From NCBI RefSeq assembly GCF_964204865.1, contig NC_135257.1, forward strand, positions 14,074,001 to 14,138,000: a DNA stretch of 64,000 bases, given 5' to 3'. This DNA comes from Styela clava (taxonomy: Eukaryota). A program made the position numbers and the translations under genes. This document shows, in pieces, positions 3,001 through 61,523 of the stretch. Within the stretch, counting starts at the first letter, position 1. Each line of letters starts with the position of its first letter. The notes beneath the pieces were generated by a model. That model saw nothing but the letters and a program-made list of their open reading frames with translations. It made no database searches and was not told the DNA's origin.

Positions 3001-3084
3001 ACCAATATGGAGGTGAATAATTTTGTTCGCCTACTTTACATCAAGCTGTGTGAAGGGACTGAAGCCTATAGGCAGGGGGTATAT

Positions 3085-3195
3085 TCACTTGGCTAACACA
3101 GACAATCCCCGAACTCCAATAGAACTAAAATAAGGAAAATCGGAATAAAATTATGGCCCAACCCTAACCTGGTACACACACTACGGGAGTACCCA
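3085..3195. mobile_element. Partial (right-half) copy of the TTAGGG-containing foldback MITE family
   Basis: CACTTGGC...AATAGAACTAAAATAAGGAAAAT...TTATGGCCCAACCCTAACCTGGTACACA...CTACGGGAGTACCC matches the copies at 5186 and 15944. Confidence 0.7.
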
Positions 3196-27800: not shown

Positions 27801-28277
27801 CAGAATCTTTCAGAAAGATGATGTGGTGTGGAGTGGATCATGATAAAGTAGACGATAAAACAGTAAGATAATAATATAACTAATATAAATAAGCACCAAT
27901 ATGCGATTTCAAGAATCAACCCATTTTAAGCTTATATCGAATATCACCCAATATTCGTAAGTACTAGGTAACGACTCAAAGCTGATGAAAAAAGAAATTG
28001 AATGTTGATTGCTTAGTACAAATTTGATTGTTCTTAAGAACCTCTAGACGTTCCAGATATGAATATGTTTAGACAGTTTTTTATAGAAAAAAATTCAGTT
28101 AAATCTCGTAGTCGTTATATATTTATTTTAGCTTAACAAATTTGAATATAAAAAGGTAACACAAGTTCTTTTAAAAAATTCTTTTTTTAGGATCGCATTC
28201 CTGCCAATGATATTTTAAAACATAAAAACTGTCAAGAAAATCCTACATTTGAAGCACAAGACGAGTTGAAAGTATAA
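21817..28277 (+). CDS. SLC5 sodium:solute symporter (SMVT/NIS/SMCT-like), paralog A; 14 exons, ~629 aa
   Basis: Exons 21817-21962, 22133-22243, 22579-22669, 23558-23675, 23849-23916, 24354-24508, 24726-24866, 25165-25294, 25590-25678, 26233-26336, 26520-26680, 27256-27601, 27720-27862, 28191-28277. Motifs [108 protein letters not shown]-terminal ENPTF. Confidence 0.93.
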
Positions 28278-42400: not shown

Positions 42401-44919
42401 GAAAAACCTAATACGACGTCTCCATCATATGGTTGTTCAAGTCATTAGCAGTCATGTGTTTGCCTAATATGTTCTAACTCTATCTGTAACAGACCACCCT
42501 TTCATTGAATGGTGTGGAAATATTTAGGTGGCAAAATAGCAGCATCTTTGAATATTTATGCATAATAATTGAAAGTATTTTTTGTGTTGATTAATCAAAT
42601 CACTAACATTTGATAATGAATTTGCAAAAGTTCCTGAGACAGAAAAGTGTTGTGCGAGTGTATATGAAAGACACCGATAAACAACCTGTACAAATGAAAA
42701 TATAACCTTCTACAGTTAGAGCAATTTCTCCGTGTTATTAATCGTGCATTGATTTTTTCAGCATTAGCTTGCTTCTACGGATTTTGTGGAATTGGATTTG
42801 CATGTATGTGTTCTATACTCGGGAATATTCTTCAAACCTCTTTAACATTACTAGGAATTCTCGGAGGTCCTACATTGGGGATGTACACTATGGGTGCTGT
42901 GTTTCCATTAGCTAACTCTTGGGTATATTTGTCTAACATTAATCACTTTGATTTATTTTTTTATTTTTTCAATATGCACCATGTCTTTATGTTTATTTAT
43001 TACATTTTATTTTTATTCACAAATGCTCAAAGAAAGGTCACTATCTCACCACTGGAAATGAGATAATTTTTGGTAGAAAAGTAGGCTGTAGCTCTGAGAT
43101 ATCGATAAACATGGAAATCAAATTATAAGGTTGTCATACCAAAACTAATAAAGTTTTTGACAATGATTTTTAAGCTCTTGAAGTTAGGTTGACAATCTTT
43201 TTTTTTATTCTAGGGTGCTTCTATCGGATTCATTTCAGGTGTGTCATTCTCGTCATGGATATATGCTGGAAGTCGACATTATCCTCCTCAACTAAAATAT
43301 TGGAAGCCGAAATATCGATCTACTTCTGAATGTGTATCGGAGAATGAGGTTGAAAGCACATTTATTAGTATGATCAACACGACAATGAAAATGACAAATA
43401 CGTCTCCTTTTCTGTCAGAAACGGTTCCGAATACAGCTACTGCATCCATACAACCGTATGACGCACCACGTCCTGCTTTGGCTAACCTGTATGATGTATC
43501 ATATCTCTACTACGCGCCAATTGGTTTAGCAGTGACTTTGGTAGTCGGGCTTGTCGTCAGTGCTTTAACATGTAAGTACAAGTGACTGAGAAGTCATTAA
43601 AATATTTATTTTATTAGGATATCGTCACGCTAATAACCGAATTGCGTAAGTCATTTTTGGGTTTTTGCATTTCGGATTCTAGCTTAGCGCGTATAAATTT
43701 GAATTTACACTACGGTATAGAAAGACGTGCACTTGTGATATTCACTGTCCGAGTCCAATTCGCCTTGGTTGGCTTTTATATTGGGTACATTGCTGTTTTA
43801 TTCTTTATATTTAATCTTAGTCTTATTTCGGTGGGTGTGCAGAACGTGTTATATTGATGAAATATATATTGTTAAACATAAAAAATAATGTAATTGAAAC
43901 TGATTAGCTATTTTGGGGATTAGACACTGTATATAATGAGAATTACATTCGTCTTTGGAATGTTTAGTTTTCAGGACTGGTGCATATAGTAAAGTTGCAA
44001 AATTGCGTATGTCCCCAAGTCATAGTCACAGTGTGCCATTATGACGTCACTTAACTGCGTCATACAAATTAACTTAAATCCGGCAACGATCAAAAAATTG
44101 AACCATGGCAAATTATTGACTCTCAATGGCATAACAATATCATTAGGAAGTTTTTTACGTTTTTCTCAAAACTGCTAAAAATGACTTACGCAATTCGGTT
44201 ATTAGTGTGACGATATATAAAGGTAATCATTTTGTTTCAAAGAATATAGCCAGTTATACATATATATTTTGACTTAATATACATGAATGCAAGGTTAGTC
44301 AGGGCATAATTTATTACAAAACTCCTTATTTTAGATGGATATAAAAACTCTAAGAAAGTAGATTCAAAACTTTTCTTCCCAATATTTGAACATCGTTTAA
44401 TGAGGTTCATTCTGCCGATGAAAGTGCGAAATGTTCTTTGTTGTGGAATGCAGCTTGAGGGTATCACCGAAGTAAGTATTGTTGAATATGAATATTCTGA
44501 TATTGATTTGAAATTTAAAGTTTGTTATGTCACAGTTCTTGGTAGATATTTTTTTGTTTCACATTTTCTCAAATTAAAACTGCCATATCTTTAGGTGGCT
44601 ATAAAAGGAACGTTTTAAACACAAAATTTCCGTTTGGGCGTTGGAAAAATTTAATTTTAAACTAACGATTGGTAGAGAAATATGTTATGTTCTGATGCTC
44701 AGCTGCAGCTTTCAATATATACAACTATCCGCAAAATTGTAGTAAACCAACTTTTTCATTTTTCGAAAAGTTACGCACGTTACTAGCATACCGGGTTACT
44801 ATAAATATTATATTTGCTAATTTTGAAAAGCATTTTTGTAAACATTTTAGATGACGTCGCAACATGACAGCTTCGTTGTGAAAGATGAAACTGACGACGA
44901 CTTAATTGTCAACTCATAA
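36497..44919 (+). CDS. SLC5 sodium:solute symporter (SMVT/NIS/SMCT-like), paralog B; 14 exons, ~624 aa
   Basis: Exons 36497-36639, 37879-37989, 38427-38517, 39052-39169, 39668-39735, 40233-40387, 40542-40682, 40878-41007, 41397-41485, 41852-41955, 42762-42922, 43214-43571, 44335-44471, 44851-44919; exons 2-11 have the same sizes as in paralog A. Motifs [38 protein letters not shown]. Confidence 0.92.
41574..41633. mobile_element. Possible degenerate 60-bp hAT mini-element
   Basis: CAGTATTTTTCAGA ... GTTTAAGAACCACTG with flanks CCATATAC / TCATAGAC (6/8 match). Confidence 0.3.
43623..44212. mobile_element. Non-autonomous DNA transposon with ~36 bp TIRs and ATAT flanks (possibly Sola1-like)
   Basis: CGTCACGCTAATAACCGAATTGCGTAAGTCATTTTT versus AAAAATGACTTACGCAATTCGGTTATTAGTGTGACG; ATAT on both sides. 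The superfamily call is inferred only from the AWWT-type 4-bp TSD. Confidence 0.75.
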
Positions 44920-45634
44920 TCAAATAAATCAGGGATGTGCAATCTGCGGCCCACAAGAAAAAATTTTGCGACCCACGGAAAAGCGCTAATTTTGAATGAT
45001 TGCATGCGCGCAAAGCGAGTTTTCAATTTACGTGCAAGAAATTCCACTCCCTTCGAGTCGCAAGAGTCTTAGCTCATCATTTCTGCGAGGATCCCTGATC
45101 AATAACAAAAAGAAACAACTTTTGTGCCGACAACTAAATAAAGGTGCGGCCCTCGGTTTCACTCGGTTATTTGTATCTGGCCCTCCTGTATTTAAAGATT
45201 GCACACCCCTGAAACACGGAACAAGCAATCTTCATCGTTTTTCATATTGAGTAGTAGAATTCTTCAGTTTTAATAACTACGTATTACTTAATATTTGGTT
45301 TATTGCCATCGAATGATAATAAATAAATGAACTGAAAACGCGTACATTGTATGTGGAAAACCAGAGATATAGCTGAATGATATTTATATCGTAGCAATTT
45401 ATTACATTTAATTTACACTTTGTATGAGTACCTTGTATATTTCGATCAATAGCCGTTTTGGAGTATCTCTAAGCGTAAGAATACCATCACATTTCAGCAA
45501 CGAGCTCAGCTTCACCCTGTCAAAATAACCTAATGCATGATAAATTTGATGTAACGTGAGCATAATAGTTTGCACTAGTCTTTAATCTGGTTAGTTTGCG
45601 CCAATTTACTACCAATTGGCAATAAATTATAGTG

Positions 45635-46507
45635 CAGAGATGGCGAACCTTTTTCAATGAATGGGTCAAAAATTATAATTTTATCGCGGAACAGAAGAGA
45701 GATAGATATTTAATTCACGATTGTATCTATAAGAAACTTCTGAAACAAATCTTATAAGCTGGTGTTGGTGTAGTTTTGGGCTTTACTTATGCAGCACTTC
45801 TATCAGGGACTTTTCATGGCACTCGGTTTTATGATATTAGAGTACGAAAACACGCACATGAATTACCAAAAACGTTTAGAATGATGCGTTAAATTATTTT
45901 ACGGTTCTAGTGTTTGGAGGTAATTCCACTTTGATAGTGTTATAATTTTCGATCAGCTTCCAACCACATTAAGCCACTTTTACACTGCCCCATTGTTATA
46001 TCAGATTTCTAGATTTTTATTTCAAGTCTGAAAGTTTTTGTTTTCACAACGGCATTGTAGACGAGAAACTAATAAAATGCAAAGTAGCATCTAGTTCTCG
46101 TATAACCACTGAAACAGTCTGCAGATGCACTTCCAAAAAAGACAGGCGTTGCGAGAGATGAACAGATCAATTGCCTTGTTATGTCATAAACGATGTCAGG
46201 CCCAATAGCTGAATAACGGTACACAGCGGTGCATACATGCGTACAAGATTAGGGGTTTTGAAAATTACCATACCGGCTCCAAAATCAACATTTTGAACAT
46301 GAGCGATCGCAGCCCTTCCTGACTGTCCAACTGAAGGTACATTATAATAGTTTAGTTATTGTTAGATTAATTTAAGGCCGGTTTTATCAATTTTTATCAC
46401 TGATATGTTAGCATTTTTTTATTTTATTCGTGCCTTCGCTTGGCGGGTAACAAATAAAACGCGGTGGGTCACTTTGTGACCCGCGGGTCAGTGGTTCGCC
46501 ATCCCTG
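45635..46507. mobile_element. Non-autonomous hAT element (873 bp), present only in duplication unit 1
   Basis: TIRs CAGAGATGGCGAACC / GGTTCGCCATCCCTG; flanks TTATAGTG (left) and ATAGTG (right). Confidence 0.88.
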
Positions 46508-47511
46508 ATAGTGTATTGAAGATAGAATTCCAATATCATTATTATCGCCAGCACATTTCTCATGTTTGGGCAACCATCTGTTGTGGCGCATTGTGACATC
46601 ATAGATTGTGACCTAGCCCTAGTATACGTATCCTGAATCTTTATGCATCATTGCGCTTCGGAAGTATTCGTATCAAGATGACGCACAACCTGAACAACCC
46701 TTACCTGGTACCCATACTGTGTTCAGATTGGGTGCCATGCATTTTATAATATCCATACTGAACGTCTGTGGGCAAACAACGTCTAACTGTAGCCATAAAG
46801 AAAAATATAAAATTGCAGGTTTAAAAATATTGCTAATATAGCTATGCCTTCTGACAAATATAGACGTTCGTATTGTCATTGCATACTTTAATACTCGGGC
46901 ATCCCCAAAATTGACGACTTATATTTCCTTGTTATTTGAGCTCTGTGTGTTTTGTTGACCAGTCAAATAGAAAATAAGTTATTCTAGATTTGTCTTTATT
47001 AGTTGTCTATCGCTATATCGAAATTACATGGAAGCCCAACTGTTAGTATGTTGAAAAAATGGTAAAAAAAAGTTTGCGATCAGATTTAATACTCCATAAT
47101 TAATTTCAGAAAACTTCCGTGCACGTCGACAACACCTAAAAGTACAAAATTGATCACGTTTTAACAGAACACATATTTACTCAAAATCATATTTATCTCA
47201 ACGCTAAGTCTTTCTGTGAGACTTTACAACTGCAGTTTTAACGAGCTATCTAATATAGATGGCAACGCATAAAAAGTATTTCTCATTTTTTCTAGCAGTT
47301 GTGTAGAATACATTAATCTCCCGGAATTAAACTCTTCAGATTTAATGTTACAAAACTGTTAAAAGCTGTCGGTCTATGTGAACCGTATCAGCGTTGATAT
47401 TTTCGCACTTTCACGTAGATATTACATAGCTTAACGATTTAAAATATTGCCATTAGTGTGAGTTTGTTCACAGTGAATTCTATACAAAAATTTTCATTCT
47501 TCAATCTATAG

Positions 47512-48330
47512 CAGTGGTTCTCAACCTGTGGTACGCGTACCACTAGTGGTCCGCGGAAGATGATCAAGTGGTACGCGAGCAGCTTTAACTTATTGCAACA
47601 ATTAACTTTTGAGTTAGCCAAAATATGCCGACAACGCTTTATCTTCCATACTGTATGTATTCGCTGAACGGCCTGAATGTTTCCCCGATTTCCTATAGTT
47701 TACTTCCGTATTCAGCAACAATCGGTAAAAAATGCTTCGTTTTTGTAGTTTTGCGTGTTATTTGTCAGTTTTCAGTTGCGTTTAAAAAAAAATTGTGAAT
47801 TAAATATCTTAATTGTCATTATGTCTTCAAAGGAGCATTAATTTAATTGCTGTAATCAAAAATGAGTCTCGCAAATGCTGCGATAGACTAATCTAAACTA
47901 AGCTATCAGTGCCTGTAAGCGGCACATGGTTGATTAATTTTAATAAAAATGAGGGTTTCCAAACACGTAAACCAGGTTATAAGCGCCAACACATCAAAAC
48001 AATCTCGAAATAAGTATAAAAAATTTTGCAATAGTAAAGTATAGGAAGAATTTCTCTGGGGTCAAGGGTCGGAGAAACGTCTTATCGGCCAGTCCAGTCT
48101 TTAGAGATCGCCCTCGCCTGCTATTGTCCACAAAGGAATCGAGATTGTCATGTTTTCGTCCGCCTTGCGAATTAGGTCACTAAGGATGTAGTGCCACATT
48201 ATAAAATACTCCCATAGCGCGTGTCTTGTGCCATTGTTCTCCGCGCCAAAAAGGGGGCTCTTTAGTGCTACGCGGCCAGAGTAAAAAACAGTAAAGTGTT
48301 ACGCGGTTAGTAAAAGGTTGAGAACCACTG
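47512..48330. mobile_element. Non-autonomous hAT (Charlie-type) MITE, 819 bp
   Basis: TIRs CAGTGGTTCTCAACC / GGTTGAGAACCACTG; perfect 8-bp TSD ATCTATAG. Confidence 0.92.
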
Positions 48331-48632
48331 ATCTATAGAAATAATTTCTACAAATTTTTGCACCAACGCGGTCTATCTTGAAAGCGATTTTTGTGTATCC
48401 AGTATCCACCAACTGAAAATTAAATGATAATAGAGAACAAATCATGAGAAATTTTTGTTTATTCGGTAGGATGGTGTATAATAACGACGACGAAGACAGA
48501 AAGTTGTTAAAAAATGATAAACACTTCAATGGTATCTTCACTGGATAGCCATTAGATTGCCCTCGTGCGGACAAATGTTATTTTCAAAAATTGGAGCAGT
48601 CTCTTAGATGCACAGATAGTTTCGTTTAACTT

Positions 48633-51600
48633 TCACTTCTCGAGGTGGGCTGGAACAAACGCATTATCTGTCATTTCTAAGGCAAGATTAGAGTGTCCCT
48701 TCTCTAGGTCTGATGATTTACGCTCAAGGTCGGAATCCTGTTAAAACATAAATATAGAAGGGGTTATGCGTCACAAGCAGATGCAATGTCCAAACCTTGT
48801 CGTGGAGCCTAAAGAGCAAGGTCGTTTAGTACTTGCAGACTGACGGATGCTCAAAACTATGCTCTATAGCCTATGGTGCCAACATTTAGTAATTGTATCA
48901 CGCTGACACACCAGTTGGGAAGAAAAATATCCTAGTGCTCACTTCACTAACAAATGCAGTTCAATAACGCAAAATAAATAAATACCTCAGCAGCATTCGA
49001 TTGATTGTGATCGACTCCACACCACATTATCATGCGAAATCCTTTAGGCAGGCAATATTTAATCAACGGATGATCAAAAACAGGTACGATTAGCTTTGGA
49101 TCAATTTCACCAACATGCCGATGTCCACCTGAATTACAAGGTTAAAACTGATATGCATATAGTTTGCTGTAAATTGAAACAAACTGAGATAAACGTATTT
49201 ACAGGTTAACAGGCTTATCAGAAGTCCGGCCACTGTAGTAGCTGCAAATCCAATTGCAGCATAATACGCGTAGGAAACGGCATATACATCAGCTACTGTA
49301 GGTCGGAGCACTGAGGATGCAGATGTTGTTGAATGATCGACGATATCAAATGCTGAAGAGATTTCTGTAACACTTATTGTTGAAATTTTGGAGGACAGTA
49401 TTGTAGAGGAATTGTAGAAAGGGCTGTCGTTTGCCAGTGTACAGTTGGTAGTTGAAAGATGTCTTGGCTTCCAAAATTGTTGGAGTGGTGGTGGATGATC
49501 GCGACTTCCAGCATATATCCACGATACTAAGGATATACCAACAAAAAAGCCAGAGAAAGAACCCTAAATGAACGTGAAAATGTTTTTTTTTTTTAGGAAT
49601 ATTTAAAGTACATGATTGGGGACATCAGGCATCTACTGGAAAGTATATTTTATTGCATAGTGAATTTCATTTTACAGTATAAAGAAAAAAACATTAACTA
49701 ACCAGAAAATGACATGTATACAGAATATATGATGACCAACAAAAACAATTATCAGATTAGAGCAATCCACAATAATGAGGTGATTAGAAAACTAGAATAT
49801 TCTGAGATTAAAAATTTAACACCGAGAGAATTTGTGCTAGTGTACACATGCAATGATTAAAATGTATGCCAAAAGTAGTGGTGGGACTCACCCACGAGTT
49901 TGCCGGTGGAAACATAGCACCCAGAGTGTACATCCCTAAAGTGGGACCTCCAACGATTGATAATAAGGTTAATGTTGTTTGCAAAATATTACCAAGTATT
50001 GTTGAAAGACAAGCAAACCCAATACTTAAAATTCCGTAGAAGAAAACCTCAACTGAAAAACAGATTGAAACAAGTTAATACACGTATTGTATACAAAACA
50101 TAAGAGTTCATCAATATTTACTATTGAAACTGCAGCGCTATTTGATGTTATTGAATTTTTTGGCTAATGTAACTATTCAATATTTACAATACAGGACGCG
50201 AATATCACTTGAATAGTCTGATATCTTTTGAAGATATTACAGCTAATGTTTGAAAGCTTATGCTGTACTGTATGTAATAATATATGGGTATGTGAGTGAC
50301 AATAAGGTTACAGACGTAAATCGGATTTCTTTCCAATTTGCATTTGACTACACCACATTGTTCGTCTCGTGTTACCTTTTATTCGCCAGCGTATGTAACC
50401 ACAGGTAAAAGCTAGAATCTTTACTTCAGAAAGATCTATTGAAATATCAAGAAAATCAGACCATTTATCAACATCTATTACAAAAAAACAAACCTTTTGC
50501 AGATATTGTCAAAGTGCGGTCACTCCAATTTACAAAAGGGCGAATGAGATCTTCTACAGTAACGCAAGACAAAGCGTTTATTCCGGCAGAAACGGGACTG
50601 AAAATTGATTGAAAAGTCGTAATTTTTGTTTTCGAAAGAAACTTATAGAATTTTTAAAAGTTTAAATGAAAAACTACCTCAAACTGCATGCAAACACTGC
50701 AGCCATGAATGCACCTGTGAATCCTGGATTACCATGAAACATCGATAAAACCATGAGAGGAAGCAACTGGAAAAAGTTTCGACAATTTTAAAATGATTGT
50801 GCCAATATAGCACAACAAAGTACATATACCGATTATTTGAGGGGAGTATTGTAAATAGGGATTCGATTTAATGCAGTACTGTTTATAATCCATGTAAGCT
50901 GTTTTTAAACCAGAGAGCTATGCTCAAATATATGGACACGTCACAAGGTGTCGCTATCATTTATTCTGACACATTAAAAACGAATCTCTCAAAGTTCACA
51001 GAAATTTTTGAAATATATAAAAGTAATAGTTTTCTGGCGAAAAAATCAATCTCTAACCACTGAAAATTTCAAAGAAATTGGTCCAGTACTCGAAGACAAG
51101 AGCGATATTATCATGACGAAGGAGAAGAAAAACAAAAACAACAACATAATATTGAAACGATCGGTATGTCCACTGACGTGTCCAATAACTTTACAATGTA
51201 TGTATACCTGGTCAGGAGAAGTCGCTTGTTTCATTGACAACGGATCGCAATTGTGAAAATAGGAGTACGTAACCCAGCCCAAAACCATGCATAGCAGAAG
51301 AACAAAAGTCACAATCGCGGCACAAGTTATCATGGCTCTGTGGAAAGAATGATATGGTAAAACATTAATCATATATTCCCCATGTATGAACAGTTATATT
51401 ATATTGAGAAAGCAAGGAAATGAACAAACATATAATTACATAAAATTGATAGTCTAAATCTAAAATGATTTATATATATTTATACATTACAGTTTCGCAT
51501 CTTTTGCAGATGTACAGACTAAGAATCTTTGTACTTGTGATTGTGTTGTAGCGAACACGCTCGTCCACATTATTGTTAAACCCACTGTGACGCTCCAGGC

Positions 51601-52411
51601 AGAATGACGTACTCTAGGATCGAGGCTGAAACTGATGGGAATAAAAAAATTAAAATAATATGACGTCATTAATATGATCATTATGGCACCAACTGCTATA
51701 GTTATATTGTATTATATCACAGTGAAATATAAAATTCAAACGAATTTATTTGTTCGAGATCAATTGCATTATGTGTGAACATATTTTATTCATTTTTAGA
51801 TGAATAATAAGGAAATCGGGTTGTGAGTGTATTTTCGGGGGTCTGGTTTAACATGAAACAATTATCTCACGTACATCTCCAATTTAAAATTCAATCGAAT
51901 TAAATCCTGAAAGAGACGCTTTGAAAAATTGTTTGTCATTGTTTTTTAATAAAATAATGAGTTAATAATAACCATGAGAAAGGTAAATACTTACTCATTG
52001 AAAGTAAAACGATCTGTTTCGTAGTTGGCCAACCAAACTTTGTACCATCCTCCCACGCTGTTCGCGCTCGTAAACAAGACTATAATTAAGATCAATATGA
52101 TCAAGATTCCTTGAAATACATGGGTTAACATCACCCCTTTGAGGCCACCCTGCATTTTGAAAATAATAATAAAAAAAAAATACATGACTGTCAAGCAGAA
52201 AATTTGTACAAATTTATTCTCCTTACCAAAGTTGTGTAAATAGAACAAACAATTCCAGTGGTAAAAATTGCCGCCCATAAATTGAAGCCAGAAACTAAAT
52301 AAAAAGTATAAATGTCATTATTAGTGAGAGGTTTACACTTTCATTGTAATTTACTGTAAAATGCTGTTGAAATATTGTTGGTTACCTTGTGCAAAAGCTA
52401 AAGACGGGGCA
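48633..52411 (-). pseudogene. 5'-truncated duplicate of SLC5 paralog C (last 26 nt of exon 4 plus exons 5-14)
   Basis: Near-identical to 56079-59856; no promoter or exons 1-3 because the junction at 52411/52413 cuts exon 4. Splice sites are intact. Changes include Met->Glu (50048-50050) and NPA->NLA (48684-48686). Confidence 0.85.
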
Positions 52412-52696
52412 ATTAACTGCGTCATACAAATTAACTTAAATCCGGCAACGATCAAAAAATTGAACCATGGCAAATTATTGACTCTCAATGGCATAACAAT
52501 ATCATTAGGAAGTTTTTTACGTTTTTCTCAAAACTGCTAAAAATGACTTACGCAATTCGGTTATTAGTGTGACGATATATAAAGGTAATCATTTTGTTTC
52601 AAAGAATATAGCCAGTTATACATATATATTTTGACCTAATGTACATGAATGCAATGTTAGTCAGGGCATAATTTATTACAAAACTCCTTATTTTAG

Positions 52697-53266
52697 ATGG
52701 ATATAAAAACTCTAGGAAAGTAGATTCAAAACTTTTCTTCCCAATATTTGAACATCGTTTAATGAGGTTTATTCTGCCGATGAAAGTGCGAAATGTTCTT
52801 TGTTGTGGAATGCAGCTTGAGGGTATCACCGAAGTAAGTATTGTTGAATATGAATATTCTGATATTTATTTGAAATTGAAAGTTTGTTATGTCACAGTTC
52901 TTGGTAGATATTTTTTTGTTTCACATTTTCTCAAATTAAAACTGCCATATCTTTAGGTGGCTATAAAAGGAACGTTTTAAACACAAAATTTCCATTTGGG
53001 CGTTGGAAAAATTTAATTTTAAACTAATGATTGGTAAAGAAATATGTTATGTTCTGATGCTCAGCTGCAGCTTTCAATATATAAAACTATCCGCAAAATT
53101 GTAGTAAACCAACTTTTTCATTTTTCGAATAGTTACGCACGTTACTAGCATACCGGGTTACTATAAATATTATATTTGCTAATTTTGAAAAGTATTTTTG
53201 TAAACATTTTAGATGACGTCGCAACATGACAGCTTCGTTGTGAAAGATGAAACTGACGACGACTAA
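52697..53266 (+). pseudogene. Orphan duplicate of SLC5 paralog B exons 13-14
   Basis: Exon 13' 52697-52833; exon 14' from 53213; TTA->TAA at 53264-53266 ends the frame 5 codons earlier than the copy at 44851-44919. Confidence 0.85.
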
Positions 53267-54961
53267 ATTGTCAACCCATAATCAAATAAATCAGGGATGT
53301 GCAATCTGCGGCCCACAAGGAAAAATTTTGCGGCCCACGGAAAAGTGCTAATTTTGAATGATTGCATGCGCGCAAAGCGAGTTTTCAATTTACGTGCAAG
53401 AAATTCCACTCCCTTCGAGTCGCAAGAGTCTTAGCTCATCATTTCTGCAAGAATTCCTGGTCAATAACAAAAAGAAACAACTTTTGTGCCGACAACTAAA
53501 TAAAGATGCGGCCCTCGGTTTCACTCGGTTATTTGTATCTGGCTCTCCTGTATTTAAAGATTGCACACCCCTGAAGCACGGAACAAGCAATCTTTATCGT
53601 TTTTCATATTGAGTAGTAGAATTCTTCGGTTTTAATAACTACGTATTGCTTAATATTTGGTTTATTGCCATCGAATGATAATAAATAAATGAACTGAAAA
53701 CGCGTACATTGTATGTGGAAAACCAGAGAAATAGCTGAATGATATTTATATCGTAGCAATTTATTACATTCAATTTACACTTTGTATGAGTACCTTGTAT
53801 ATTTCGATCAATAGCCGTTTTGGAGTATCTCTAAGCGTAAGAATACCATCACATTTCAGCAACGAGCTCAGCTTCACCCTGTCAAAATAACCTAATGCAT
53901 GATAAATTTGATGTAACGTGAGCATAATAGTTTGCACTAGTCTTTAATCTGGTTAGTTTGCGCCAATTTACTACCAATTGGCAATAAATTATAGTCAATA
54001 TAGTGTATTGAAGATAGAATTCCAATATCATTATTATCGCCAGCACATTTCTCATGTTTGGGCGACCATCTGTTGTGGCGCATTGTGACATCATAGATTG
54101 TGACCTAGCCCTAGTATACGTATTCTGAATCTTCATGCGTCATTGCGCTTCGGAAGTTTTCGTATCAGGATGACGCACAACCTGAACAACCCTTACCTGG
54201 TACCCATACTGTGTTCAGATTGGGCGCCATGCATTTTTTGATATCCATACTACACGTCTGTGGGCAAACAACCCAAACAACGTCTAACTTTAGCCATAAA
54301 CAAAAATATAAAACTGCGCGTTTAAAAATATTGCTAATATAGCTATGCCTTCTGACAAATATAGACGTTCGTATTGTCATTGCATACTTTAATACTCGGG
54401 CATCCCCAAAATTGACGACTTATATTTCCTTGTTATTTGAGCTCTGTGTGTTTTGTTGACCAGTCAAATAGAAAATAAGTTATTCTAGATTTGTCTTTAT
54501 TAGTTGTCTATCGCTCTATCGAAATTACATGGAAGCCCAACTGTTAGTATGTTGAAAAAATGGTAAAAAAAAGTTTGCGATGAGATTTAATACTCCATAA
54601 TTAATTTCAGAAAACTTCCGTGCACGTCGACAACACCTAAAAGTACAAAATTGATCACGTTTTAACAGAGACTTTACAACTGCAGTTTTAACGAGCTATC
54701 TAATATAGATGGCAACGTATGAAAAGTATTTCTCATTTTTTCTAGCAGTTGTGTAGAATACATTAATCTTCCGGAATTAAACTCTTCAGATTTAATGTTA
54801 CAAAACTGTTAAAAGCTGTCGGTCTATGTGAACCGTATCAGCGTTGATATTTTCGCACTTTCACGTAGATATTACATAGCTTAACGATTTAAAATATTGC
54901 CATTAGAGTGAGTTCGTTCACAGTGAATTCTATACAAAAATTTTTATTCTTCAATCTATAG

Positions 54962-55777
54962 CAGTGGTTCTCAACCTGTGGTACGCGTACCACTAGTGGT
55001 CCGCGGAAGATGATCAAGTGGTACGCGAGCAGCTTTAACTTATTGCAACAATTAACTTTTGAGTTAGCCAAAATATGCCGACAACGCTTCATCTTCCATA
55101 CTGTATGTATTCGCTGAACGGCCTGAATGTTTCCCCGATTTCCTAGTTTACTTCCGTATTCAGCAACATTCGGTAAAAAATGCTTCGTTTTTGTAGTTTT
55201 GCGTGTTATTTGTCAGTTTTCAGTTGCGTTTAAAAAAAATTGTGAATCAAATATCTTAATTGTCATTATGTCTTCAAAGGAGCATTAATTTAATTGCTGT
55301 AATCAAAAATGAGTCTCGCAAATGCTGCGATAGACTAATCTAAACTAAGCTATCAGTGCCTGTAAGCGGCACATGGTTGATTAATTTTAATAAAAATGAG
55401 GGTTTCCAAACACGTAAACCAGGTTATAAGCGCCAACACATCAAAACAATCTCGAAATAAGTATAAAAAAATTTGCAATAGTAAAGTATAGGAAGAATTT
55501 CTCTGGGGTCAAGGGTCGGAGAAACGTCTTATCGGCCAGTCCAGTCTTTAGAGATCGCCCTCGCCTGCTATTGTCCACGAAGGAATCGAGGTTGTCATGT
55601 TTTCGACCGCCTTGCGAATTAGGTCACTAAGGATGTAGTGCCACATTATAAATTACTCCCATAGCGCGTGTCTTTTGCCATTGTTCCCCGCGCCAAAAAG
55701 AGGGCTCTTTAGTGCTACGCGGCCAGAGTAAAAAACAGTAAAGTGGTACGCGGTTAGTAAAAGGTTGACAACCACTG
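54962..55777. mobile_element. Duplicate copy of the hAT MITE at 47512
   Basis: CAGTGGTTCTCAACC ... GGTTGACAACCACTG; TSD ATCTATAG. Confidence 0.9.
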
Positions 55778-56078
55778 ATCTATAGAAATAATTTCTACAA
55801 ATTTTTGCACCAACGCGGTCTATCTTGAAAGCGATTTTTGTGTATCCAGTATCCACCAACTGAAAATTAAATGATAATAGAGAACAAATCATGAGAAATT
55901 TTTGTTTATTCGGTAGGATGGTGTGTAATAACGACGACGAAGACAGAAAGTTGTTAAAAATGATAAACACTTCAATGGTATCTTCACTGGATGGCCATTA
56001 GATTGCCCTCGTGCGGACAAATGTTATTTTCAAAATTTGGAGCAGTCTCTTAGATGCACAGATAGTTTCGTTTAACTT

Positions 56079-59000
56079 TCACTTCTCGAGGTGGGCTAGA
56101 ACAAACGCATTATCTGTCATTTCTAAGGCAGGATTAGAGTGTCCCTTCTCTAGGTCTGGTGATTTACGCTCAAGGTCGGAAGCCTGTTAAAACATAAATA
56201 TAGAAGGGGTTATGCGTCACAAGCAGATACAATGTCCAAACCTTGTCGTGGAGCCTAAAGCGCAAGGTCGTTTAGTACTTGCAGACTGACGGATGCTCAA
56301 AACTATGCTCTATAGCCTATGGTGCCAGCATTTAGTAATTGTATCGCTCTGACTCGCCAGTTGGGAAGAAAAATATCCTAGAGCTCACTTCACTAACAAA
56401 TGCAGTTCAATAACGCAAAATAAATAAATACCTCAGCAGTATTCGATTGATTGTGATCGACTCCACACCACATTATCATGCGAAATCCTTTTGGCAGGCA
56501 ATATTTAATCAACGGATGATCAAAAACAGGTACGATTAGCTTTGGATCAATTTCACCAACATGCCGATGTCCACCTGAATTACAAGGTTAAAACTGATAT
56601 GCATATAGTTTGCTGTAAATTGAAACAAACTGAGATAAACGTATTTACAGGTTAACAGGCTTATCAGAAGTCCGGCCACTGTAGTAGCTGCAAATCCAAT
56701 TGCAGCATAATACGCGTAGGAAACGGCATATACATCAGCTACTGTAGGTCGGAGCACTGAGGATGTAGATGTTGTTGAATGATCGACGACATCGAATGCT
56801 GAAGAGATTTCTGTAACACTTATTGTTGAAATTTTGGAGGACAGTATTGTAGAGGAATTGTAGAGAGGGCTGTCGTTTGCCAGTGTACAGTTGGTAGTTG
56901 AAAGATGTCTTGGCTTCCAAAATTGTTGGAGTGGTGGTGGATGATCGCGACTTCCAGCATATATCCACGATACTAAGGATATACCAACAAAAAAGCCAGA
57001 GAAAGAACCCTGAATGAACGTGAAAATGTTCTTTTTTTAGGAATATTTAAAGTACATGATTGGGGACATCAGGCATCTACTGGAAAGTATATTTTATTGC
57101 ATAGTGAATTTCATTTTACAGTATAAAGAAAAAAACATTAACTAACCAGAAAATGACATGTATACAGAATATATGATGACCAACAAAAACAATTATCAGA
57201 TTAGAGCAATCCACAATAATGAGGTGATTAGAAAACTAGAATATTCTGAGATTAAAAATTTAACACCGAGAGAATTTGTGCTAGTGTACACATGCAATGA
57301 TTAAAATGTATGCCAAAAGTAGTGGTGGGACTCACCCACGAGTTTGCCGGTGGAAACATAGCACCCAGAGTGTACATCCCTAAAGTGGGACCTCCAACGA
57401 TTGATAATAAGGTTAATGTTGTTTGCAAAATATTACCAAGTATTGTTGAAAGACAAGCAAACCCAATACTTAAAATTCCGTAGAAGAAAACCATAACTGA
57501 AAAACAGATTGAAACAAGTTAATACACGTATTGTATACAAAACATAAGAGTTCATCAATATTTACTATTGAAACTGCAGCGCTATTTGATGTTATTGAAT
57601 TTTTTGGCTAATGTAACTATTCAATATTTACAATACAGGACGCGAATATCACTTGAATAGTCTGATATCTTTTGAAGATATTACAGCTAATGTTTGAAAG
57701 CTTATGCTGTACTGTATGTAATAATATATGGGTATGTGAGTGACAATAAGGTTACAGACGTAAATCGGATTTCTTTCCAATTTGCATTTGACTACACCAC
57801 ATTGTTCGTCTCGTGTTACCTTTTATTCGCCAGCGTATGTAACCACAGGTAAAAGCTAGAATCTTTACTTCAGAAAGATCTATTGAAATATCAAGAAAAT
57901 CAGACCATTTATCAACATCTATTACAAAACAACAAACCTTTTGCAGATATTGTCAAAGTGCGGTCACTCCAATTTACAAAAGGGCGAATGAGATCTTCTA
58001 CAGTAACGCAAGACAAAGCGTTTATTCCGGCAGAAACGGGACTGAAAATTGATTGAAAAGTCGTAATTTTTGTTTTCGAAAGAAACTTATAGAATTTTTA
58101 AAAGTTCAAATGAAAAACTACCTCAAACTGCATGCAAACACTGCAGCCATGAATGCACCTGTGAATCCTGGATTACCATGAAACATCGATAAAACCATGA
58201 GAGGAAGCAACTGGAAAAAGTTTCGACAATTTTAAAATGATTGTGCCAATATAGCACAACAAAGTACATATACCGATTATTTGAGGGGAGTATTGTAAAT
58301 AGGGATTCGATTTAATGCAGTACTGTTTATAATCCATGTAAGCTGTTTTTAAACCAGAGAGCTATGCTCAAATATATGGACACGTCACAAGGTGTCGCTA
58401 TCATTTATTCTGACACATTAAAAACGAATCTCTCAAAGTTCACAGAAATTTTTGAAATATATAAAAGTAATAGTTTTCTGGCGAAAAAATCAATCTCTAA
58501 CCACTGAAAATTTCAAAGAAATTGGTCCAGTACTCGAAGACAAGAGCGATATTATCATGACGAAGGAGAAGAAAAACAAAAACAACAACATAATATTGAA
58601 ACGATCGGTATGTCCACTGACGTGTCCAATAACTTTACAATGTATGTATACCTGGTCAGAAGAAGTCGCTTGTTTCATGGACAACGGATCGCAATTGTGA
58701 AAATAGGAGTACGTAACCCAGCCCAAAACCATGCATAGCAGAAGAACAAAAGTCACAATCGCGGCACAAGTTATCATGGCTCTGTGGAAAGAATGATATG
58801 GTAAAACATTAATCATATATTCCCCATGTATGAACAGTTATATTATATTGAGAAAGCAAGGAAATGAACAAACATATAATTACATAAAATTGATAGTCTA
58901 AATCTAAAATGATTTATATATATATATATACATTACAGTTTCGCATCTTTTGCAGATGTACAGACTAAGAATCTTTGTACTTGTGATTGTGTTGTAGCGA

Positions 59001-61523
59001 ACACGCTCGTCCACATTATTGTTAAACCCACTGTGACGCTCCAGGCAGAATGACGTACTCTAGGATCGAGGCTGAAACTGATGAGAATAAAAAAAATTAA
59101 AATAATATGACGTCATTAATATGATCATTATGGCACCAACTGCTATAGTTATATTGTATTATATCACAGTGAAATATAAAATTCAAAAGCATTTATTTGT
59201 TCGAGATCAATTGCATCATGTGTGAACATATTTTATTCATTTTTAGATAAATAATAAAGAAATCGGGTTGTGAGTGTATTTTCGGTGGTCTGGTTTAACA
59301 TTAAACAACTATCCCACGTACATCTCCAATTTAAAATTCAATCGAATTAAATCCTGGAAGAAACGCTTTGAAAAATTGTTTGTCATTGTTTTTTAATAAA
59401 ATAATGAGTTAATAATAACCATGAAAGGTAAATACTTACTCATTGAAAGTAAAACGATCTGTTTCGTAATTGGCCAACCAAACTTTGTACCACCCGCCAA
59501 CGCTGCTCGCGCTCGTAAACAAGACTATAATTAAGATCAATACGATCAAGATTCCTTGAAATACATGGGTTAACATCACCCCTTTGAGGCCACCCTGCAT
59601 TTTGAAAATAATAATAAAAAAAAAATACATGACTGTCAAGCAGAAAATTTGTACAAATTTATTCTCCTTACCAAAGTTGTGTAAATAGAACAAACAATTC
59701 CAGTGGTAAAAATTGCCGCCCATAAATTGAAGCCAGAAACTAAATAAAAAGTATAAATGTCATTATTAGTGAGAAGTTTACACTTTCATTGTAATTTACT
59801 GTAAAATGCTGTTGAAATATTGTTGGTTACCTTGTGCAAAAGCTAAAGACGGGGCATATATCATTACTCCCATGAATAAGGTCGTTTGCGTTATATAAGC
59901 AAGAGTGCCAAGAATTCGAACAGGAGCACTGAACCGCAGCTGAAGGTACTAAAATAGAAATCTAAGTATTTGATACTGCACAGCCATCAGAATAATGCCT
60001 TAAGAATTATATGCACAAGTAGTAAGCTCTATCCGAAGTATTTAATACTATATTAAATTTCAATGTAAGTGTGCAATAGAATATACGTGTATATATTTCA
60101 TTTTCAGGTAATACGCTAAATAAAAAATCATTGTGTTGACAGTTTAGGAAAAATATAAAAAACAGTATTTATTAATAGCATCAACATAGTTTCACACAAT
60201 TTCACAATTTCACACAAAGAGAACTTTTTGAGCGCAAATGAGTACTAGTTACATGAAGTCTTTAATAACAAAAAGGTCTGTGTCTGTTGCAAGCATATTA
60301 TGTTGTTGTTTTTTTAATTCAAATCAAACTACGTGTGCTCTTTACTTGCAACCATTATTCATAGTCAAAGACCGTTTTTTTTTATTTGGATCTTAATATT
60401 AAACTTACCTCATAGCTGCTGGTGATACTTACTCGAAAATATAAAGGAATATATATTTGAGTAACAACTATTCCCACCAACAGCGGTACTAAAAGCATCC
60501 TGAAATTATAAAAGATGGCTTGATACTTGACGCTGTGCAACTTTCTGCCCCAAAGAACATACATACAGTTAGTTTTAAGTTTGGTTTGAAATACTCTATG
60601 AATAAAAAGTTGGCAATTTAACACGAAAAACTGTTCCCATCACGCTACTACAATTGTAAATAAAGCTTTTGTTTATTGTTTCTCGTTCGCATCAACAAAG
60701 ATAGGAATGTGTCTACCACATTTGGAAGTGAGTTCTGATCGATTTGAAAAGTGTAAAAATTATCAGAGTTTTTGAATCTGATCAGTTTACTGCAGAGTCC
60801 GTATTGTATTCCAAGGCTGTGCTTATTTTAAACTATTTTCAGTTCATAAGGTTCTGCCTGAGTTTGAGGTATGGGTCGGGCCTGCATTTTTGGATTTAGG
60901 ATTATCGCATTGTGTGATTAGATTGATTGCCGTTGCTAACACTATAGTCATAGTCATTTTAGTTAAAACTACTCACCAAAAGAACATGGAGCCGAAGATG
61001 TAAATTTCGGAAGGTATGCCAAGTATTGTGGCTGGAGTTATAACAGAAAAACTGAGTGATACTCCAACTGTCCAAAAAGACATTTTTCTTGAAAAAATAA
61101 GCATTATATATCATAAATAAGAAATCAGTTTATTAGGTAATTGTTGGTCAAAAAATAATAATTAATAAATAAAAGTATCAAATATTCATCAGTGAAATGT
61201 TTAAGCAATAGAAGAATTCTTCTGGCTAGGTCTAATGTTACAGTCTAATATTCGACTAATATCAGTCTAATATTTTTGAACAAAACAATTCATGCACATA
61301 AAGGAGTTATATTGTGACCTACCTAGTCGCAAACTAAAACCAGTGTAAAATAATACAAATAATATAAAAATTGTTTGTTGTACCTTCCACCCATGAGATA
61401 ATGTTGCACTCCGCGTTTGGCTCTTCTGTCTCGTATGCCAAAATATATTCCTATTCCTAGAGAAACTGCCAGCATAGCACCAAATACAGCATAATCTCCT
61501 GCTCCAAGAACTATTCTATCCAT
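56079..61523 (-). CDS. SLC5 sodium:solute symporter-like paralog C with a degenerate Na2 site; 14 exons, ~638 aa
   Basis: Exons 61523-61384, 61087-60977, 60499-60409, 59948-59831, 59739-59672, 59594-59440, 59077-58937, 58781-58652, 58210-58122, 58041-57938, 57496-57336, 57009-56649, 56574-56432, 56183-56079; phase-compatible, no stop or frameshift found (1917 nt). Motifs GGLKGVMLTHVFQ, QSQVQRFLVC, ACSLSPVSAGINALS. Confidence 0.9.

What the first reader, a model, noticed from the sequence alone, without database searches (positions are those of the whole stretch)
56079..61523. Intact SLC5 paralog that has lost Na+-coupling residues, including a natural NIS T354P equivalent: candidate Na+-uncoupled transporter, sensor or pseudo-transporter
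Seen: paralogs A and B keep [13 protein letters not shown] and GSLST(V/L)SSGINA. Paralog C reads GGLKGVMLTHVFQ (His codon 59565-59567) and CSLSPVSAGINA (Pro codon 58038-58040). Its 14-exon ORF is otherwise uninterrupted, and the orphan duplicate has the same codons (52120-52122, 50594-50596), so these are unlikely to be base-calling errors. Established: in NIS (SLC5A5), D191 of WTDVFQ and the TMS IX hydroxyls S353/T354/S356/T357 contribute to Na+ binding and coupling, and T354P is a classic iodide-transport-defect mutation; SGLT3 is a known SLC5 that acts as a sensor. Inference: changes equivalent to D191H, T354P and T357A fall in different exons but converge on one structural site. This suggests change of function (uniporter, H+-coupled carrier using the His, transceptor or regulatory partner) rather than random decay.
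Basis: partly seen in the sequence, partly recalled or inferred. Interest (0 to 1): 0.8.

Follow-up and report, generated by a model that had tools for sequence, protein, structure and literature searches.

The report
Sea-squirt SLC5 transporter lacking sodium sites
A sea squirt (Styela clava) carries an intact, transcribed copy of a sodium-coupled monocarboxylate-type transporter gene in which the residues that normally hold sodium have been replaced, so it probably no longer runs on sodium, but what it does instead is untested.

Summary
Gene C (minus strand, 61523-56079) has 14 GT-AG exons and encodes 638 aa. It is identical to NCBI's Styela clava model XP_039271556.2, "sodium-coupled monocarboxylate transporter 2-like".

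Alignments to solved structures place its His at NIS D191, its Pro at NIS T354 and its Ala at NIS T357. I found two more changes at a second sodium site: Phe at NIS Y144 and Thr at NIS S69.

Among 217 relatives, none has anything but Asp, Thr and Tyr at the first three of these five positions (D191, T354, Y144). Ala at the T357 position is common (77 of 217, the SMCT2 type).

RNA-derived contigs from three studies carry the predicted splice joints. His and Pro are present in every source examined.

Coding variants in residues 1-440 are 3 nonsynonymous to 8 synonymous (pN/pS 0.12). C's branch is not longer than those of its paralogs.

C-only changes at conserved columns are concentrated in sodium-site columns (5 of 9; Fisher p = 0.00015).

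Best reading: a maintained, lineage-specific paralog whose sodium sites have been dismantled, probably sodium-independent (proton-coupled or facilitative). Function is untested and no ortholog was found.

The "orphan duplicate" is a 98-98.5% identical tandem copy and is not independent evidence.

The parts
56079..61523 (-). Gene C: 14-exon SLC5A8/A12-like (SMCT-like) gene, 638 aa. Exons: 61523-61384, 61087-60977, 60499-60409, 59948-59831, 59739-59672, 59594-59440, 59077-58937, 58781-58652, 58210-58122, 58041-57938, 57496-57336, 57009-56649, 56574-56432, 56183-56079
   Evidence: GT-AG, phases, 1917 nt. (exon peptides match P0027 = XP_039271556.2). (spliced contigs; X2 record 12, 2159 nt, spans 55916-61602).
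59565..59567 (-). His186 codon (CAT), at the position of NIS D191 / SMCT1 D189 / SMVT D203 / SGLT1 D204 / SiaT D182
   Evidence: ungapped alignments. (Asp in 217 of 217 relatives).
58038..58040 (-). Pro349 codon (CCC), at the position of NIS T354 (hydroxyl ligand of the canonical Na2 ion)
   Evidence: (Thr in 217 of 217 relatives). (paper passages).
58029..58031 (-). Ala352 codon (GCC), at the position of NIS T357 (Na3-type ligand in SiaT terms)
   Evidence: (Ser 130, Ala 77, Thr 10 of 217; Ala is the SMCT2-type state).
59874..59876 (-). Phe139 codon (TTC), at the position of NIS Y144 (Na1 ligand)
   Evidence: exon 4 residues 1-37 aligned to NIS 120-156, ungapped. (Tyr in 217 of 217).
61036..61038 (-). 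Thr64 codon (ACT), at the position of NIS S69 / SMCT1 S67 (Na1 ligand in the unwound part of the first core helix)
   Evidence: aligned to SMCT1 54-85. (Ser in 216 of 217).
58130..58132 (-). Cys345 codon (TGC), at the position of NIS G350 (its backbone carbonyl binds Na2)
   Evidence: Gly in 208 of 217..
59571..59582 (-). Gly181 and Leu184 in the [13 protein letters not shown] motif (relatives: Ala in 214 of 217, Trp in 217 of 217)
48633..52416 (-). Copy D: 5'-truncated duplicate of C (end of exon 4 plus exons 5-14). NCBI models it as XP_077971634.1, 456 aa.
44048..59845 (.). Tandem segmental duplication. Unit 1 is 44048-52400 and unit 2 is 52410-59845, 96-98.5% identical by piece (most of it 98-98.5%). 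The breakpoint lies inside C exon 4 and inside B's 3' part. Unit 1 carries an extra ~0.9 kb (45633-46508).
   Evidence: blastn. (junction read).
52699..52812 (+). Orphan copy of paralog B's exon 13 (B's own is at 44337-44450), made by the same duplication
21826..27847 (+). Paralog A (matches to C exons 1-13). Canonical WTDVFQ and [10 protein letters not shown].
   Evidence: P0003.
36527..44450 (+). Paralog B (matches to C exons 1-13). Canonical WTDVFQ and LSTLSSGINA. Shares Val and Pro with C at the NIS F67 and A70 positions.
   Evidence: (P0002).

Best explanation
Shown. Gene C is a real, intact, transcribed member of a Styela clava-specific cluster of SLC5A8/A12-like (SMCT-like) transporter genes. 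It keeps the NIS/SMCT1 fold. It has replaced, by single-base changes, residues that are otherwise invariant in its relatives and that form both sodium sites described for NIS:
- Canonical Na2 site: T354 to Pro, D191 to His, G350 to Cys.
- Na1 site: Y144 to Phe, S69 to Thr.
- One Na3-type ligand: T357 to Ala.
The rest of the membrane core is still under purifying selection.

Inferred. The protein no longer couples transport to Na+ in the ancestral way. It most likely works as a Na+-independent carrier of a small anion of the monocarboxylate type, either proton-coupled or facilitative. His186 sits on the helix that corresponds to LeuT TM5, next to the emptied Na2 site. It is a candidate to take over the ion's role of tying the first core helix to TM8. 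A TM5 Lys or Arg does this in the Na+-independent LeuT-fold carriers ApcT, BasC and CaiT.
For: Gene model and transcription: 14 GT-AG exons, 638 aa, equal to NCBI's model.

Splicing:
- Contigs of X1, X2 and X7 (three studies) carry 11 of the 13 predicted introns as listed joints, with CT..AC ends on the + strand.
- A 12th intron (56572 to 56647) shows as piece boundaries, and the 13th as a one-sided boundary at 59593.
- One 2159-nt contig covers all exons.
- The DNA-like run X12 has none of these joints.

Family and fold: PF00474 is precomputed for the protein. The AlphaFold2 model has mean pLDDT 85.4 and pTM 0.86. Its best structural matches are NIS (target TM-score 0.92) and SMCT1 (0.94).

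Residue equivalences.

Rarity: in 217 relatives the positions are Asp 217, Thr 217, Tyr 217, Ser 216, Gly 208.

Clustering: of 134 columns at least 95% conserved, 9 are changed in C alone, and 5 of those 9 lie among the 11 conserved sodium-site columns. B has 1 of 4 such changes in the set, and E and A have 0.

Site roles: passages of bioRxiv 10.1101/2025.10.07.681042, bioRxiv 10.1101/2022.04.07.487502 and PMC5931594 Table 2.

Selection: 23 coding variants in four runs. Residues 1-440 have 3 nonsynonymous and 8 synonymous (pN/pS 0.12, binomial p = 0.0008). Residues 441-638 have 10 and 2.

Rate: terminal branches are C 0.51, B 0.64, A 0.36, E 0.27.

Precedents: DUR3 is a sodium-solute symporter family member that lacks a key TM8 Na2 serine and is described as proton-coupled (passages). 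A TM5 Lys or Arg stands at the Na2 position in BasC, ApcT, GkApcT and CaiT (passages).
Against: - No transport data exist.
- In human NIS the same T354P change is a loss-of-function disease allele (PMC6316985, passages), so C could simply be inactive.
- No ortholog was found. The best hit outside S. clava is 45% identical, so I could not test whether His and Pro are old and conserved.
- Two C alleles differ at 15 of 638 residues (6 in residues 1-440), against 3 of 636 (1 in the core) for paralog E. That hints at weaker constraint on C.
- The variant counts are small, come from contigs, and 5 variant rows were not shown.
- Exon and intron divergence between C and D are alike (20/1472 against 26/2292).
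- The role proposed for His186 is by analogy only. I could not measure distances because the model's coordinates are not returned.
- Ser348, Gln189 and the backbone carbonyls of the Na2 site remain, so some cation binding is not excluded.
Confidence: 0.5

Rival explanations
1. C is a non-transporting protein, or a gene in early decay. It would be still transcribed and still open, but functionally dead as a carrier: a pseudo-transporter, a sensor, a regulatory partner or a young unitary pseudogene.
For: - T354P inactivates human NIS.
- Substitutions at S69 and Y144 strongly reduce NIS transport.
- C alleles differ five times more at the protein level than E alleles (15/638 against 3/636).
- pN/pS in the last third of the protein is above 1.
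- No ortholog shows long-term retention of the His/Pro state.
- The locus is unstable, with a recent partial duplication.
Against: - All 638 codons and 26 splice sites are intact after about 40% protein divergence from the nearest paralog.
- Core pN/pS is 0.12.
- C's branch is shorter than that of the canonical paralog B.
- The private changes are concentrated at sodium sites rather than scattered.
- 101 of 134 conserved columns are kept, against 109 for E and 110 for B.
- The model is confidently folded.
Confidence: 0.27
2. C is still Na+-coupled, with altered stoichiometry or affinity. It would use the remaining ligands (Ser348, Gln189, backbone carbonyls, Thr64 hydroxyl), much as SMCT2-type proteins do without the Na3-type hydroxyls.
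For: - Ser at the NIS S353 position and Gln at the Q194 position are kept.
- S69 to Thr keeps a hydroxyl.
- Ala at the T357 position is normal in 77 of 217 relatives.
- In SiaT the Na3 site is described as modulatory.
Against: - The T354 hydroxyl is a direct Na2 ligand.
- In SiaT, mutating either Na2 serine, or D182, abolished uptake.
- None of 217 relatives tolerates a change at D191, T354 or Y144.
- Both sites are hit at once.
Confidence: 0.2
3. The unusual residues are assembly or annotation artefacts.
For: The neighbouring copy D could be a haplotype placed in tandem, because several C/D differences segregate as alleles of C in other samples.
Against: The His and Pro codons are read identically in six sources: the window, the older annotation allele P0254, RNA-derived contigs of three studies, and a DNA-like run of another sample.
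Confidence: 0.02

Closest known systems
SMCT1/SMCT2 (SLC5A8/SLC5A12), sodium-coupled monocarboxylate transporters
   Same: Best-scoring named relatives (36-43% identity). Same Pfam family PF00474. Model matches the SMCT1 structure 7sl9_A with target TM-score 0.94. Thr at the NIS Q72 position, as in 207 of 217 relatives. Ala at the T357 position, as in SMCT2-named proteins.
   Different: C alone lacks the Asp, the Na2 Thr and the Na1 Tyr (0 of 217 relatives do). It belongs to a Styela-specific clade (A, B, C, E; support 100), not to either vertebrate orthology group.
Human NIS (SLC5A5) T354P iodide-transport-defect allele
   Same: The same residue change at the same aligned position. The position is a direct Na2 ligand.
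   Different: In NIS it is a disease allele on an otherwise normal protein. In C it is present in every sample examined, in a paralog that has also changed D191, Y144, S69, G350 and T357, with the core under purifying selection.
DUR3 urea/H+ symporter (plant and fungal member of the sodium-solute symporter family)
   Same: A member of the same superfamily in which a key TM8 Na2 serine is not conserved, and which is described as proton-coupled (passages). DUR3 structures appear among the fold matches (ranks 31-36).
   Different: Distant clade (12-15% identity). The coupling proposed for DUR3 uses an Asp-Glu pair, not a His at the D191 position.
ApcT, BasC, GkApcT and CaiT: Na+-independent LeuT-fold carriers with a TM5 Lys or Arg at the Na2 position
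   Same: A basic or protonatable side chain on the TM5-equivalent helix beside an Na2 site that holds no ion (passages). SiaT D182, which aligns with NIS D191, is on TM5.
   Different: Different families. The exact structural equivalence of C's His186 to ApcT K158 was not tested here. His is only partly charged at neutral pH.
SGLT3 (SLC5A4), glucose-sensing SLC5 (recalled, from no call)
   Same: An SLC5 paralog that changed from transporter to another role.
   Different: As I recall it, SGLT3 keeps Na+ binding and lost sugar translocation. C shows the opposite pattern: the ion sites are changed.

Membership tests
Sodium:solute symporter family (Pfam PF00474) / SLC5 | Match to the family profile | tested here: met
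   PF00474.24 is precomputed for P0027. I did not run a Pfam scan of my own.
Sodium:solute symporter family (Pfam PF00474) / SLC5 | LeuT-type fold with the NIS/SMCT1 13-helix architecture, and a break in the first core helix | tested here: met
   AlphaFold2 pLDDT 85.4, pTM 0.86; helix break at residues 62-65. Foldseek: NIS 7uuz E = 1.9e-28, target TM 0.92; SMCT1 7sl9_A target TM 0.94.
SLC5A8/A12-like (SMCT-like) subgroup | Closest named relatives and tree position | tested here: met
   Named hits are SMCT1 or SMCT2-like. C sits in a Styela clade nested among tunicate SMCT-like proteins (quick tree). It is not an ortholog of either vertebrate gene.
Na+-coupled SLC5 symporter (functional class) | Hydroxyl pair on TM8 at the canonical Na2 site (NIS S353/T354; SiaT S342/S343) | tested here: not met
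   C has Ser-Pro. 217 of 217 relatives have Ser-Thr.
Na+-coupled SLC5 symporter (functional class) | Conserved Asp of the GG..A...TD..Q motif (NIS D191, SGLT1 D204, SiaT D182) | tested here: not met
   C has His. 217 of 217 relatives have Asp.
Na+-coupled SLC5 symporter (functional class) | Na1 ligands of NIS (S69, Y144; Q72 is Thr in SMCT-type proteins) | tested here: not met
   Tyr to Phe (217 of 217 relatives have Tyr). Ser to Thr keeps a hydroxyl.
Na+-coupled SLC5 symporter (functional class) | Na+-dependent substrate transport | not testable with these tools
   Needs uptake or electrophysiology.
Pseudogene | Stops, frameshifts or lost splice sites | tested here: not met
   None in 14 exons.
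Pseudogene | No transcription | tested here: not met
   Spliced contigs in runs of three studies.
Pseudogene | Neutral pattern of substitution | tested here: inconclusive
   Core pN/pS is 0.12 (p = 0.0008) but rests on 11 variants. The last third of the protein gives 1.6. The C/D exon and intron divergences are alike. Protein allele divergence is higher than in E.

The most novel reading that the evidence does not exclude
An animal SLC5 transporter has been converted in nature from Na+ coupling to proton coupling or Na+-independent transport. Both sodium sites were dismantled and a protonatable His was placed on the TM5-equivalent helix beside the empty Na2 site, as in ApcT. Its neighbours in the same gene cluster form a graded series (E canonical; A; B with the first-helix changes F67V, A70P and S66T; C with everything). 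That series would let the path of the switch be reconstructed by experiment.
Probability: 0.3. Interest if true: 0.75.

Novelty: new variant of a known kind. Interest (0 to 1): 0.58.

Why it matters
How LeuT-fold carriers choose and use their coupling ion is usually studied with engineered mutants that mostly just break the protein. Here nature offers a maintained SLC5 protein with the Na2 Thr, the conserved Asp and the Na1 Tyr all replaced. Close canonical paralogs (55-60% identical) sit in the same cluster as ready-made controls.

If C transports without Na+, it would show which minimal set of changes re-wires coupling in the NIS/SMCT/SMVT group, which is medically important. It would also show that the NIS T354P change can be tolerated in a suitable background.

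If C proves inactive, it is an ordinary case of a paralog beginning to decay, and a caution against reading automatic names such as "sodium-coupled" as function.

Tried and rejected
Ortholog search:
- A search of the 50%-identity representative library with exon 12 alone gave 25 hits. The best were 38-45% identical in that exon, and they included this species' own paralogs B (P0002) and A (P0003).
- The whole-protein search with the database record P0027 gave nothing above 60%, and nothing outside S. clava above 45%.
- So conservation of His and Pro in orthologs could not be tested.

C against D as a dN/dS pair:
- I dropped this as a test of constraint. Seven of the 20 exon differences segregate as alleles of C in other runs, and the older allele P0254 is a C/D mosaic. 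D is therefore not an independent neutral lineage.

Other steps that led nowhere:
- My first regex for the TM8 motif was too strict (103 of 251 without a match). I replaced it with a family alignment.
- The allele comparison for A and B by tblastn was spoiled by alignments running into introns. I used only C and E, which were compared protein to protein.
- The careful tree did not finish in 300 s. The quick tree (SH-aLRT only) is what I report.
- The structure tool returns no coordinates, so I could not measure His186-Pro349 distances.
- I did not compute codon-level dN/dS between C and A, B or E, because synonymous sites should be saturated at 55-60% protein identity.
- A search of the intron-8 repeat against phage records was pointless and found nothing.
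- I did not use one protein search, one structure job, the atlas search or the metagenome and genome scans.

Rows left out:
- The family alignment used 221 of 255 proteins held. I left out proteins shorter than 540 aa or longer than 720 aa, except P0003, and the four close variants P0252-P0255.

Papers:
- I saw only listings and passages found by term, never whole texts.
- Supplements were closed. Supplementary Data 1 of PMC5931594 (residue patterns at Na2/Na3 in 39,612 family members) could show whether His at this position occurs elsewhere. The supplements of PMC9953650 could show which SMCT-like gene is expressed in the endostyle.
- I found no paper describing this gene in the searches. One search (Styela clava plus monocarboxylate transporter) returned 2 papers, and neither mentions it in the passages read.

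Full report
WHAT IS THERE

The minus strand of 56079-61523 holds a 14-exon gene. Every intron begins GT and ends AG behind a pyrimidine tract. The exons add up to 1917 nt (638 codons plus TGA) and no frame is broken.

A six-frame motif scan and a tblastn of each exon peptide against the window find the other copies:
- Paralog A on the + strand (exons 1-13 at 21826-27847).
- Paralog B on the + strand (36527-44450).
- A 5'-truncated copy D on the minus strand (52416-48633: the end of exon 4 plus exons 5-14).
- An orphan copy of B's exon 13 (52699-52812).

A and B carry the canonical motifs.

WHOSE GENE IT IS

Exon 12 alone, run against the representative library, returned this species' own paralogs B (P0002) and A (P0003). 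A search with P0002 named the organism, Styela clava. It also returned P0027, NCBI's XP_039271556.2, [quoted passage not shown], 638 aa.

My 14 exon peptides lie in P0027 in order, separated only by the split-codon residues. From that point I used this public record for whole-protein work.

The window is G000:C9:14074001-14138000. The same chromosome holds many more SLC5-like exons between 12.15 and 15.15 Mb.

RESIDUE EQUIVALENCES

- A profile of the four exon-6 peptides aligns without gaps to NIS 182-223 (9zfl_A), SMCT1 from 180, SMVT 194-240, SiaT from 173 and SGLT1 from 195. The His is therefore NIS D191 = SMCT1 D189 = SMVT D203 = SiaT D182 = SGLT1 D204.
- Exon 10 residues 3-22 align without gaps to NIS 356-375. 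The Pro is therefore at 354 and the Ala at 357.
- Exon 4 residues 1-37 align to NIS 120-156, which makes C's Phe139 the equivalent of NIS Y144.
- Exon 2 aligns to SMCT1 54-85, which makes C's Thr64 the equivalent of SMCT1 S67. With the family alignment and the constant offset of 5, that is NIS S69.

WHAT THESE POSITIONS DO (passages only)

- In the engineered NIS structure, the canonical Na2 ion is bound by the carbonyls of M68 and G350, the hydroxyl of T354, Q194, and a water held by S353, D191 and Q194. The Na1 ion is bound by S69, Q72 and Y144 (bioRxiv 10.1101/2025.10.07.681042).
- The earlier NIS structure paper reports strongly reduced transport for substitutions at 69, 72 and 144 (bioRxiv 10.1101/2022.04.07.487502).
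- The SiaT paper lists NIS D191, S353, S356, T357 and S66 as the Na3-site equivalents. It reports that mutating either Na2 serine, or D182, abolishes uptake (PMC5931594).
- T354P is listed among loss-of-function NIS alleles (PMC6316985).

C therefore carries changes at both sodium sites: T354P, D191H and G350C at Na2; Y144F and S69T at Na1; and T357A at the Na3-type position.

HOW UNUSUAL

I aligned 221 family members (540-720 aa, plus the partial A). With the four Styela paralogs A, B, C and E set aside, 217 remain. Their residues at the key positions are:

| NIS position | Residues in 217 relatives |
|---|---|
| D191 | Asp 217 |
| T354 | Thr 217 |
| Y144 | Tyr 217 |
| S69 | Ser 216 |
| G350 | Gly 208 |
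| T357 | Ser 130, Ala 77, Thr 10 |

The T357 position is variable, and Ala there goes with Ala at 356 in the SMCT2-named proteins (13 of 13 sampled). C's Ser-Ala combination does occur in 0 of 217.

Of 134 columns at least 95% conserved, C differs at 33, E at 25, B at 24 and the partial A at 15. Nine are changed in C alone: F6L, S64T, Y139F, A181G, W184L, D186H, G345C, T349P and A358S.

Five of these nine fall in the 11 conserved columns of a sodium-site set that I took from the papers above. The same test gives 1 of 4 for B, 0 of 4 for E and 0 of 2 for A.

IS IT ALIVE?

Expression. Contigs of three runs from three studies (X1, X2, X7) are labelled RNA by guess only. They skip the predicted introns exactly, with CT..AC ends on the + strand.
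- 11 of 13 introns are listed as joints in all three runs.
- The 56572/56647 intron shows as piece boundaries.
- The 59593 boundary is one-sided.
- Three joint rows were not shown.
- One X2 contig of 2159 nt runs from 55916 to 61602 through all exons.
- The DNA-like run X12 has none of these joints, so the three runs are cDNA-derived.

Contigs cannot give expression level or tissue.

Polymorphism. Neither codon shows another letter in any of the four runs (40 variant rows shown, 5 not shown). The older-annotation allele P0254 also keeps His and Pro.

Selection. 23 of the 40 variant rows lie in the CDS.

| Region | Nonsynonymous | Synonymous | pN/pS |
|---|---|---|---|
| Residues 1-440 | 3 | 8 | 0.12 (binomial p = 0.0008) |
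| Residues 441-638 | 10 | 2 | 1.6 |

Residues 1-440 have 1008.7 nonsynonymous and 311.3 synonymous sites. Residues 441-638 cover TM12, a loop with pLDDT below 50, TM13 and the tail.

Rate. In a quick maximum-likelihood tree of 33 proteins, A, B, C and E form a Styela-only clade (support 100). Terminal branches are C 0.51, B 0.64, A 0.36 and E 0.27, so C is not globally accelerated.

Fold. The AlphaFold2 model, built from a 36-row alignment, has pLDDT 85.4 and pTM 0.86. It shows the usual break in the first core helix at residues 62-65. Its best matches are NIS and SMCT1, with target TM-scores of 0.92-0.94.

EVIDENCE THE OTHER WAY

- There is no functional assay.
- The same Pro kills human NIS.
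- No ortholog exists in the collections. The best non-Styela hit is 45% identical, so the age of the changes is unknown.
- The two C alleles differ at 15 of 638 residues (6 in the core), against 3 of 636 (1 in the core) for E.
- C and D differ as much in exons (20 of 1472) as in introns (26 of 2292).
- The variant sample is small.

THE DUPLICATE

Stretches 44048-52400 and 52410-59845 form a head-to-tail duplication, 96-98.5% identical by piece and mostly 98-98.5%. The junction is clean. It joins the middle of C's exon 4 to B's 3' region.

This explains both orphan pieces: D and the extra copy of B's exon 13. NCBI models D as a 456-aa protein starting at the Met of MLTHVFQ.

Seven of the 20 exon differences between C and D appear as alleles of C in other runs, and P0254 is a mosaic of the two. 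D is therefore one of three things: a very young duplicate, a duplicate kept similar to C by gene conversion, or a haplotype misplaced in tandem. I could not tell which. Either way it is not an independent witness for the His and Pro codons.

MECHANISM

Shown: an intact, transcribed SLC5 protein with a constrained core, whose Na2 and Na1 ligands are replaced.

Inferred:
- Ancestral Na+ coupling is lost or deeply altered.
- Two precedents point to Na+-independent transport. DUR3, in the same superfamily, lacks a key TM8 Na2 serine and is described as proton-coupled. The Na+-independent LeuT-fold carriers BasC, ApcT, GkApcT and CaiT place a Lys or Arg of TM5 at the Na2 position to tie TM1 to TM8.
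- C's His186 sits on the TM5-equivalent helix, since SiaT D182 is on TM5, next to that site. I propose, by analogy only, that it serves as the protonatable or fixed substitute for the ion.
- The neighbours form a graded series that would suit stepwise mutagenesis. E is canonical. B already shares Val and Pro with C at the NIS F67 and A70 positions and has S66T.

My odds: Na+-independent carrier 0.5; non-transporting or decaying 0.27; still Na+-coupled 0.2; artefact 0.02.

COMPARISON AND NOVELTY

By homology C is a member of the sodium-solute symporter family / SLC5, of the SMCT-like group. It fails three sequence features that go with Na+ coupling in that group.

The gene is already in public annotation under an automatic name. 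In my searches I found no paper that describes its altered sites.

It is a new variant of a known kind. It is interesting to transporter biophysicists as a natural experiment, but it remains a sequence-based prediction.

Noticed in passing
window 44048-59845: A head-to-tail segmental duplication of about 7.4-8.4 kb, 96-98.5% identical by piece. Its breakpoint lies inside C's exon 4. It leaves a 5'-truncated copy of C (D, modelled by NCBI as a 456-aa protein) and an orphan copy of B's exon 13. Unit 1 has about 0.9 kb extra at 45633-46508. Several C/D differences segregate as alleles of C in other samples, so D may be a polymorphic duplicate, a gene-conversion partner or a misplaced haplotype.
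   Followed up: partly
window 58228-58640 (intron 8 of C; same element in D at about 50784-51196): A dispersed repeat about 280 bp long. Contig depth there is hundreds to thousands of times the flanks in all four runs. The genome search gave 2387 first-look candidates, with 40 scored copies at 81-91% identity on many chromosomes. It looks SINE- or MITE-like.
   Followed up: partly
window 60409-60433 (end of exon 3): Two GTAAGT donor sites lie 24 nt apart. NCBI isoform X2 (P0253, 630 aa) uses the upstream one and loses VSITSSYE, which includes residues conserved across the family. The spliced contigs of all three RNA-derived runs use the downstream donor.
   Followed up: partly
L001 (G000:C4:10084990-10089591), ORF 1285-3141 minus strand: An intronless SLC5 paralog with a 618-aa open frame, 36% identical to C. 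It reads GGIKGIVTADCFQ (Asp kept, Trp replaced) and LSTVSTGIHS (His where relatives have the Asn of INA). It is possibly a retrogene.
   Followed up: no
G000:C9, about 12.15 to 15.15 Mb: Many further SLC5A8-like exon matches lie on the same chromosome, at 14.33-14.44 Mb, 12.15 Mb and 15.14-15.15 Mb. This is a large lineage-specific expansion. The canonical paralog E (P0026/P0255) probably lies at 14.428-14.437 Mb.
   Followed up: no
window exon 2 of A (22134-22241), B (37883-37984), C (61086-60979): All Styela paralogs of this clade carry Phe at the NIS A65 position (Ala in 171 of 217 relatives) and Ile or Leu at M68. B and C also share Val at F67 and Pro at A70. The unwound ion-binding part of the first core helix was therefore already drifting before C's private changes.
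   Followed up: partly
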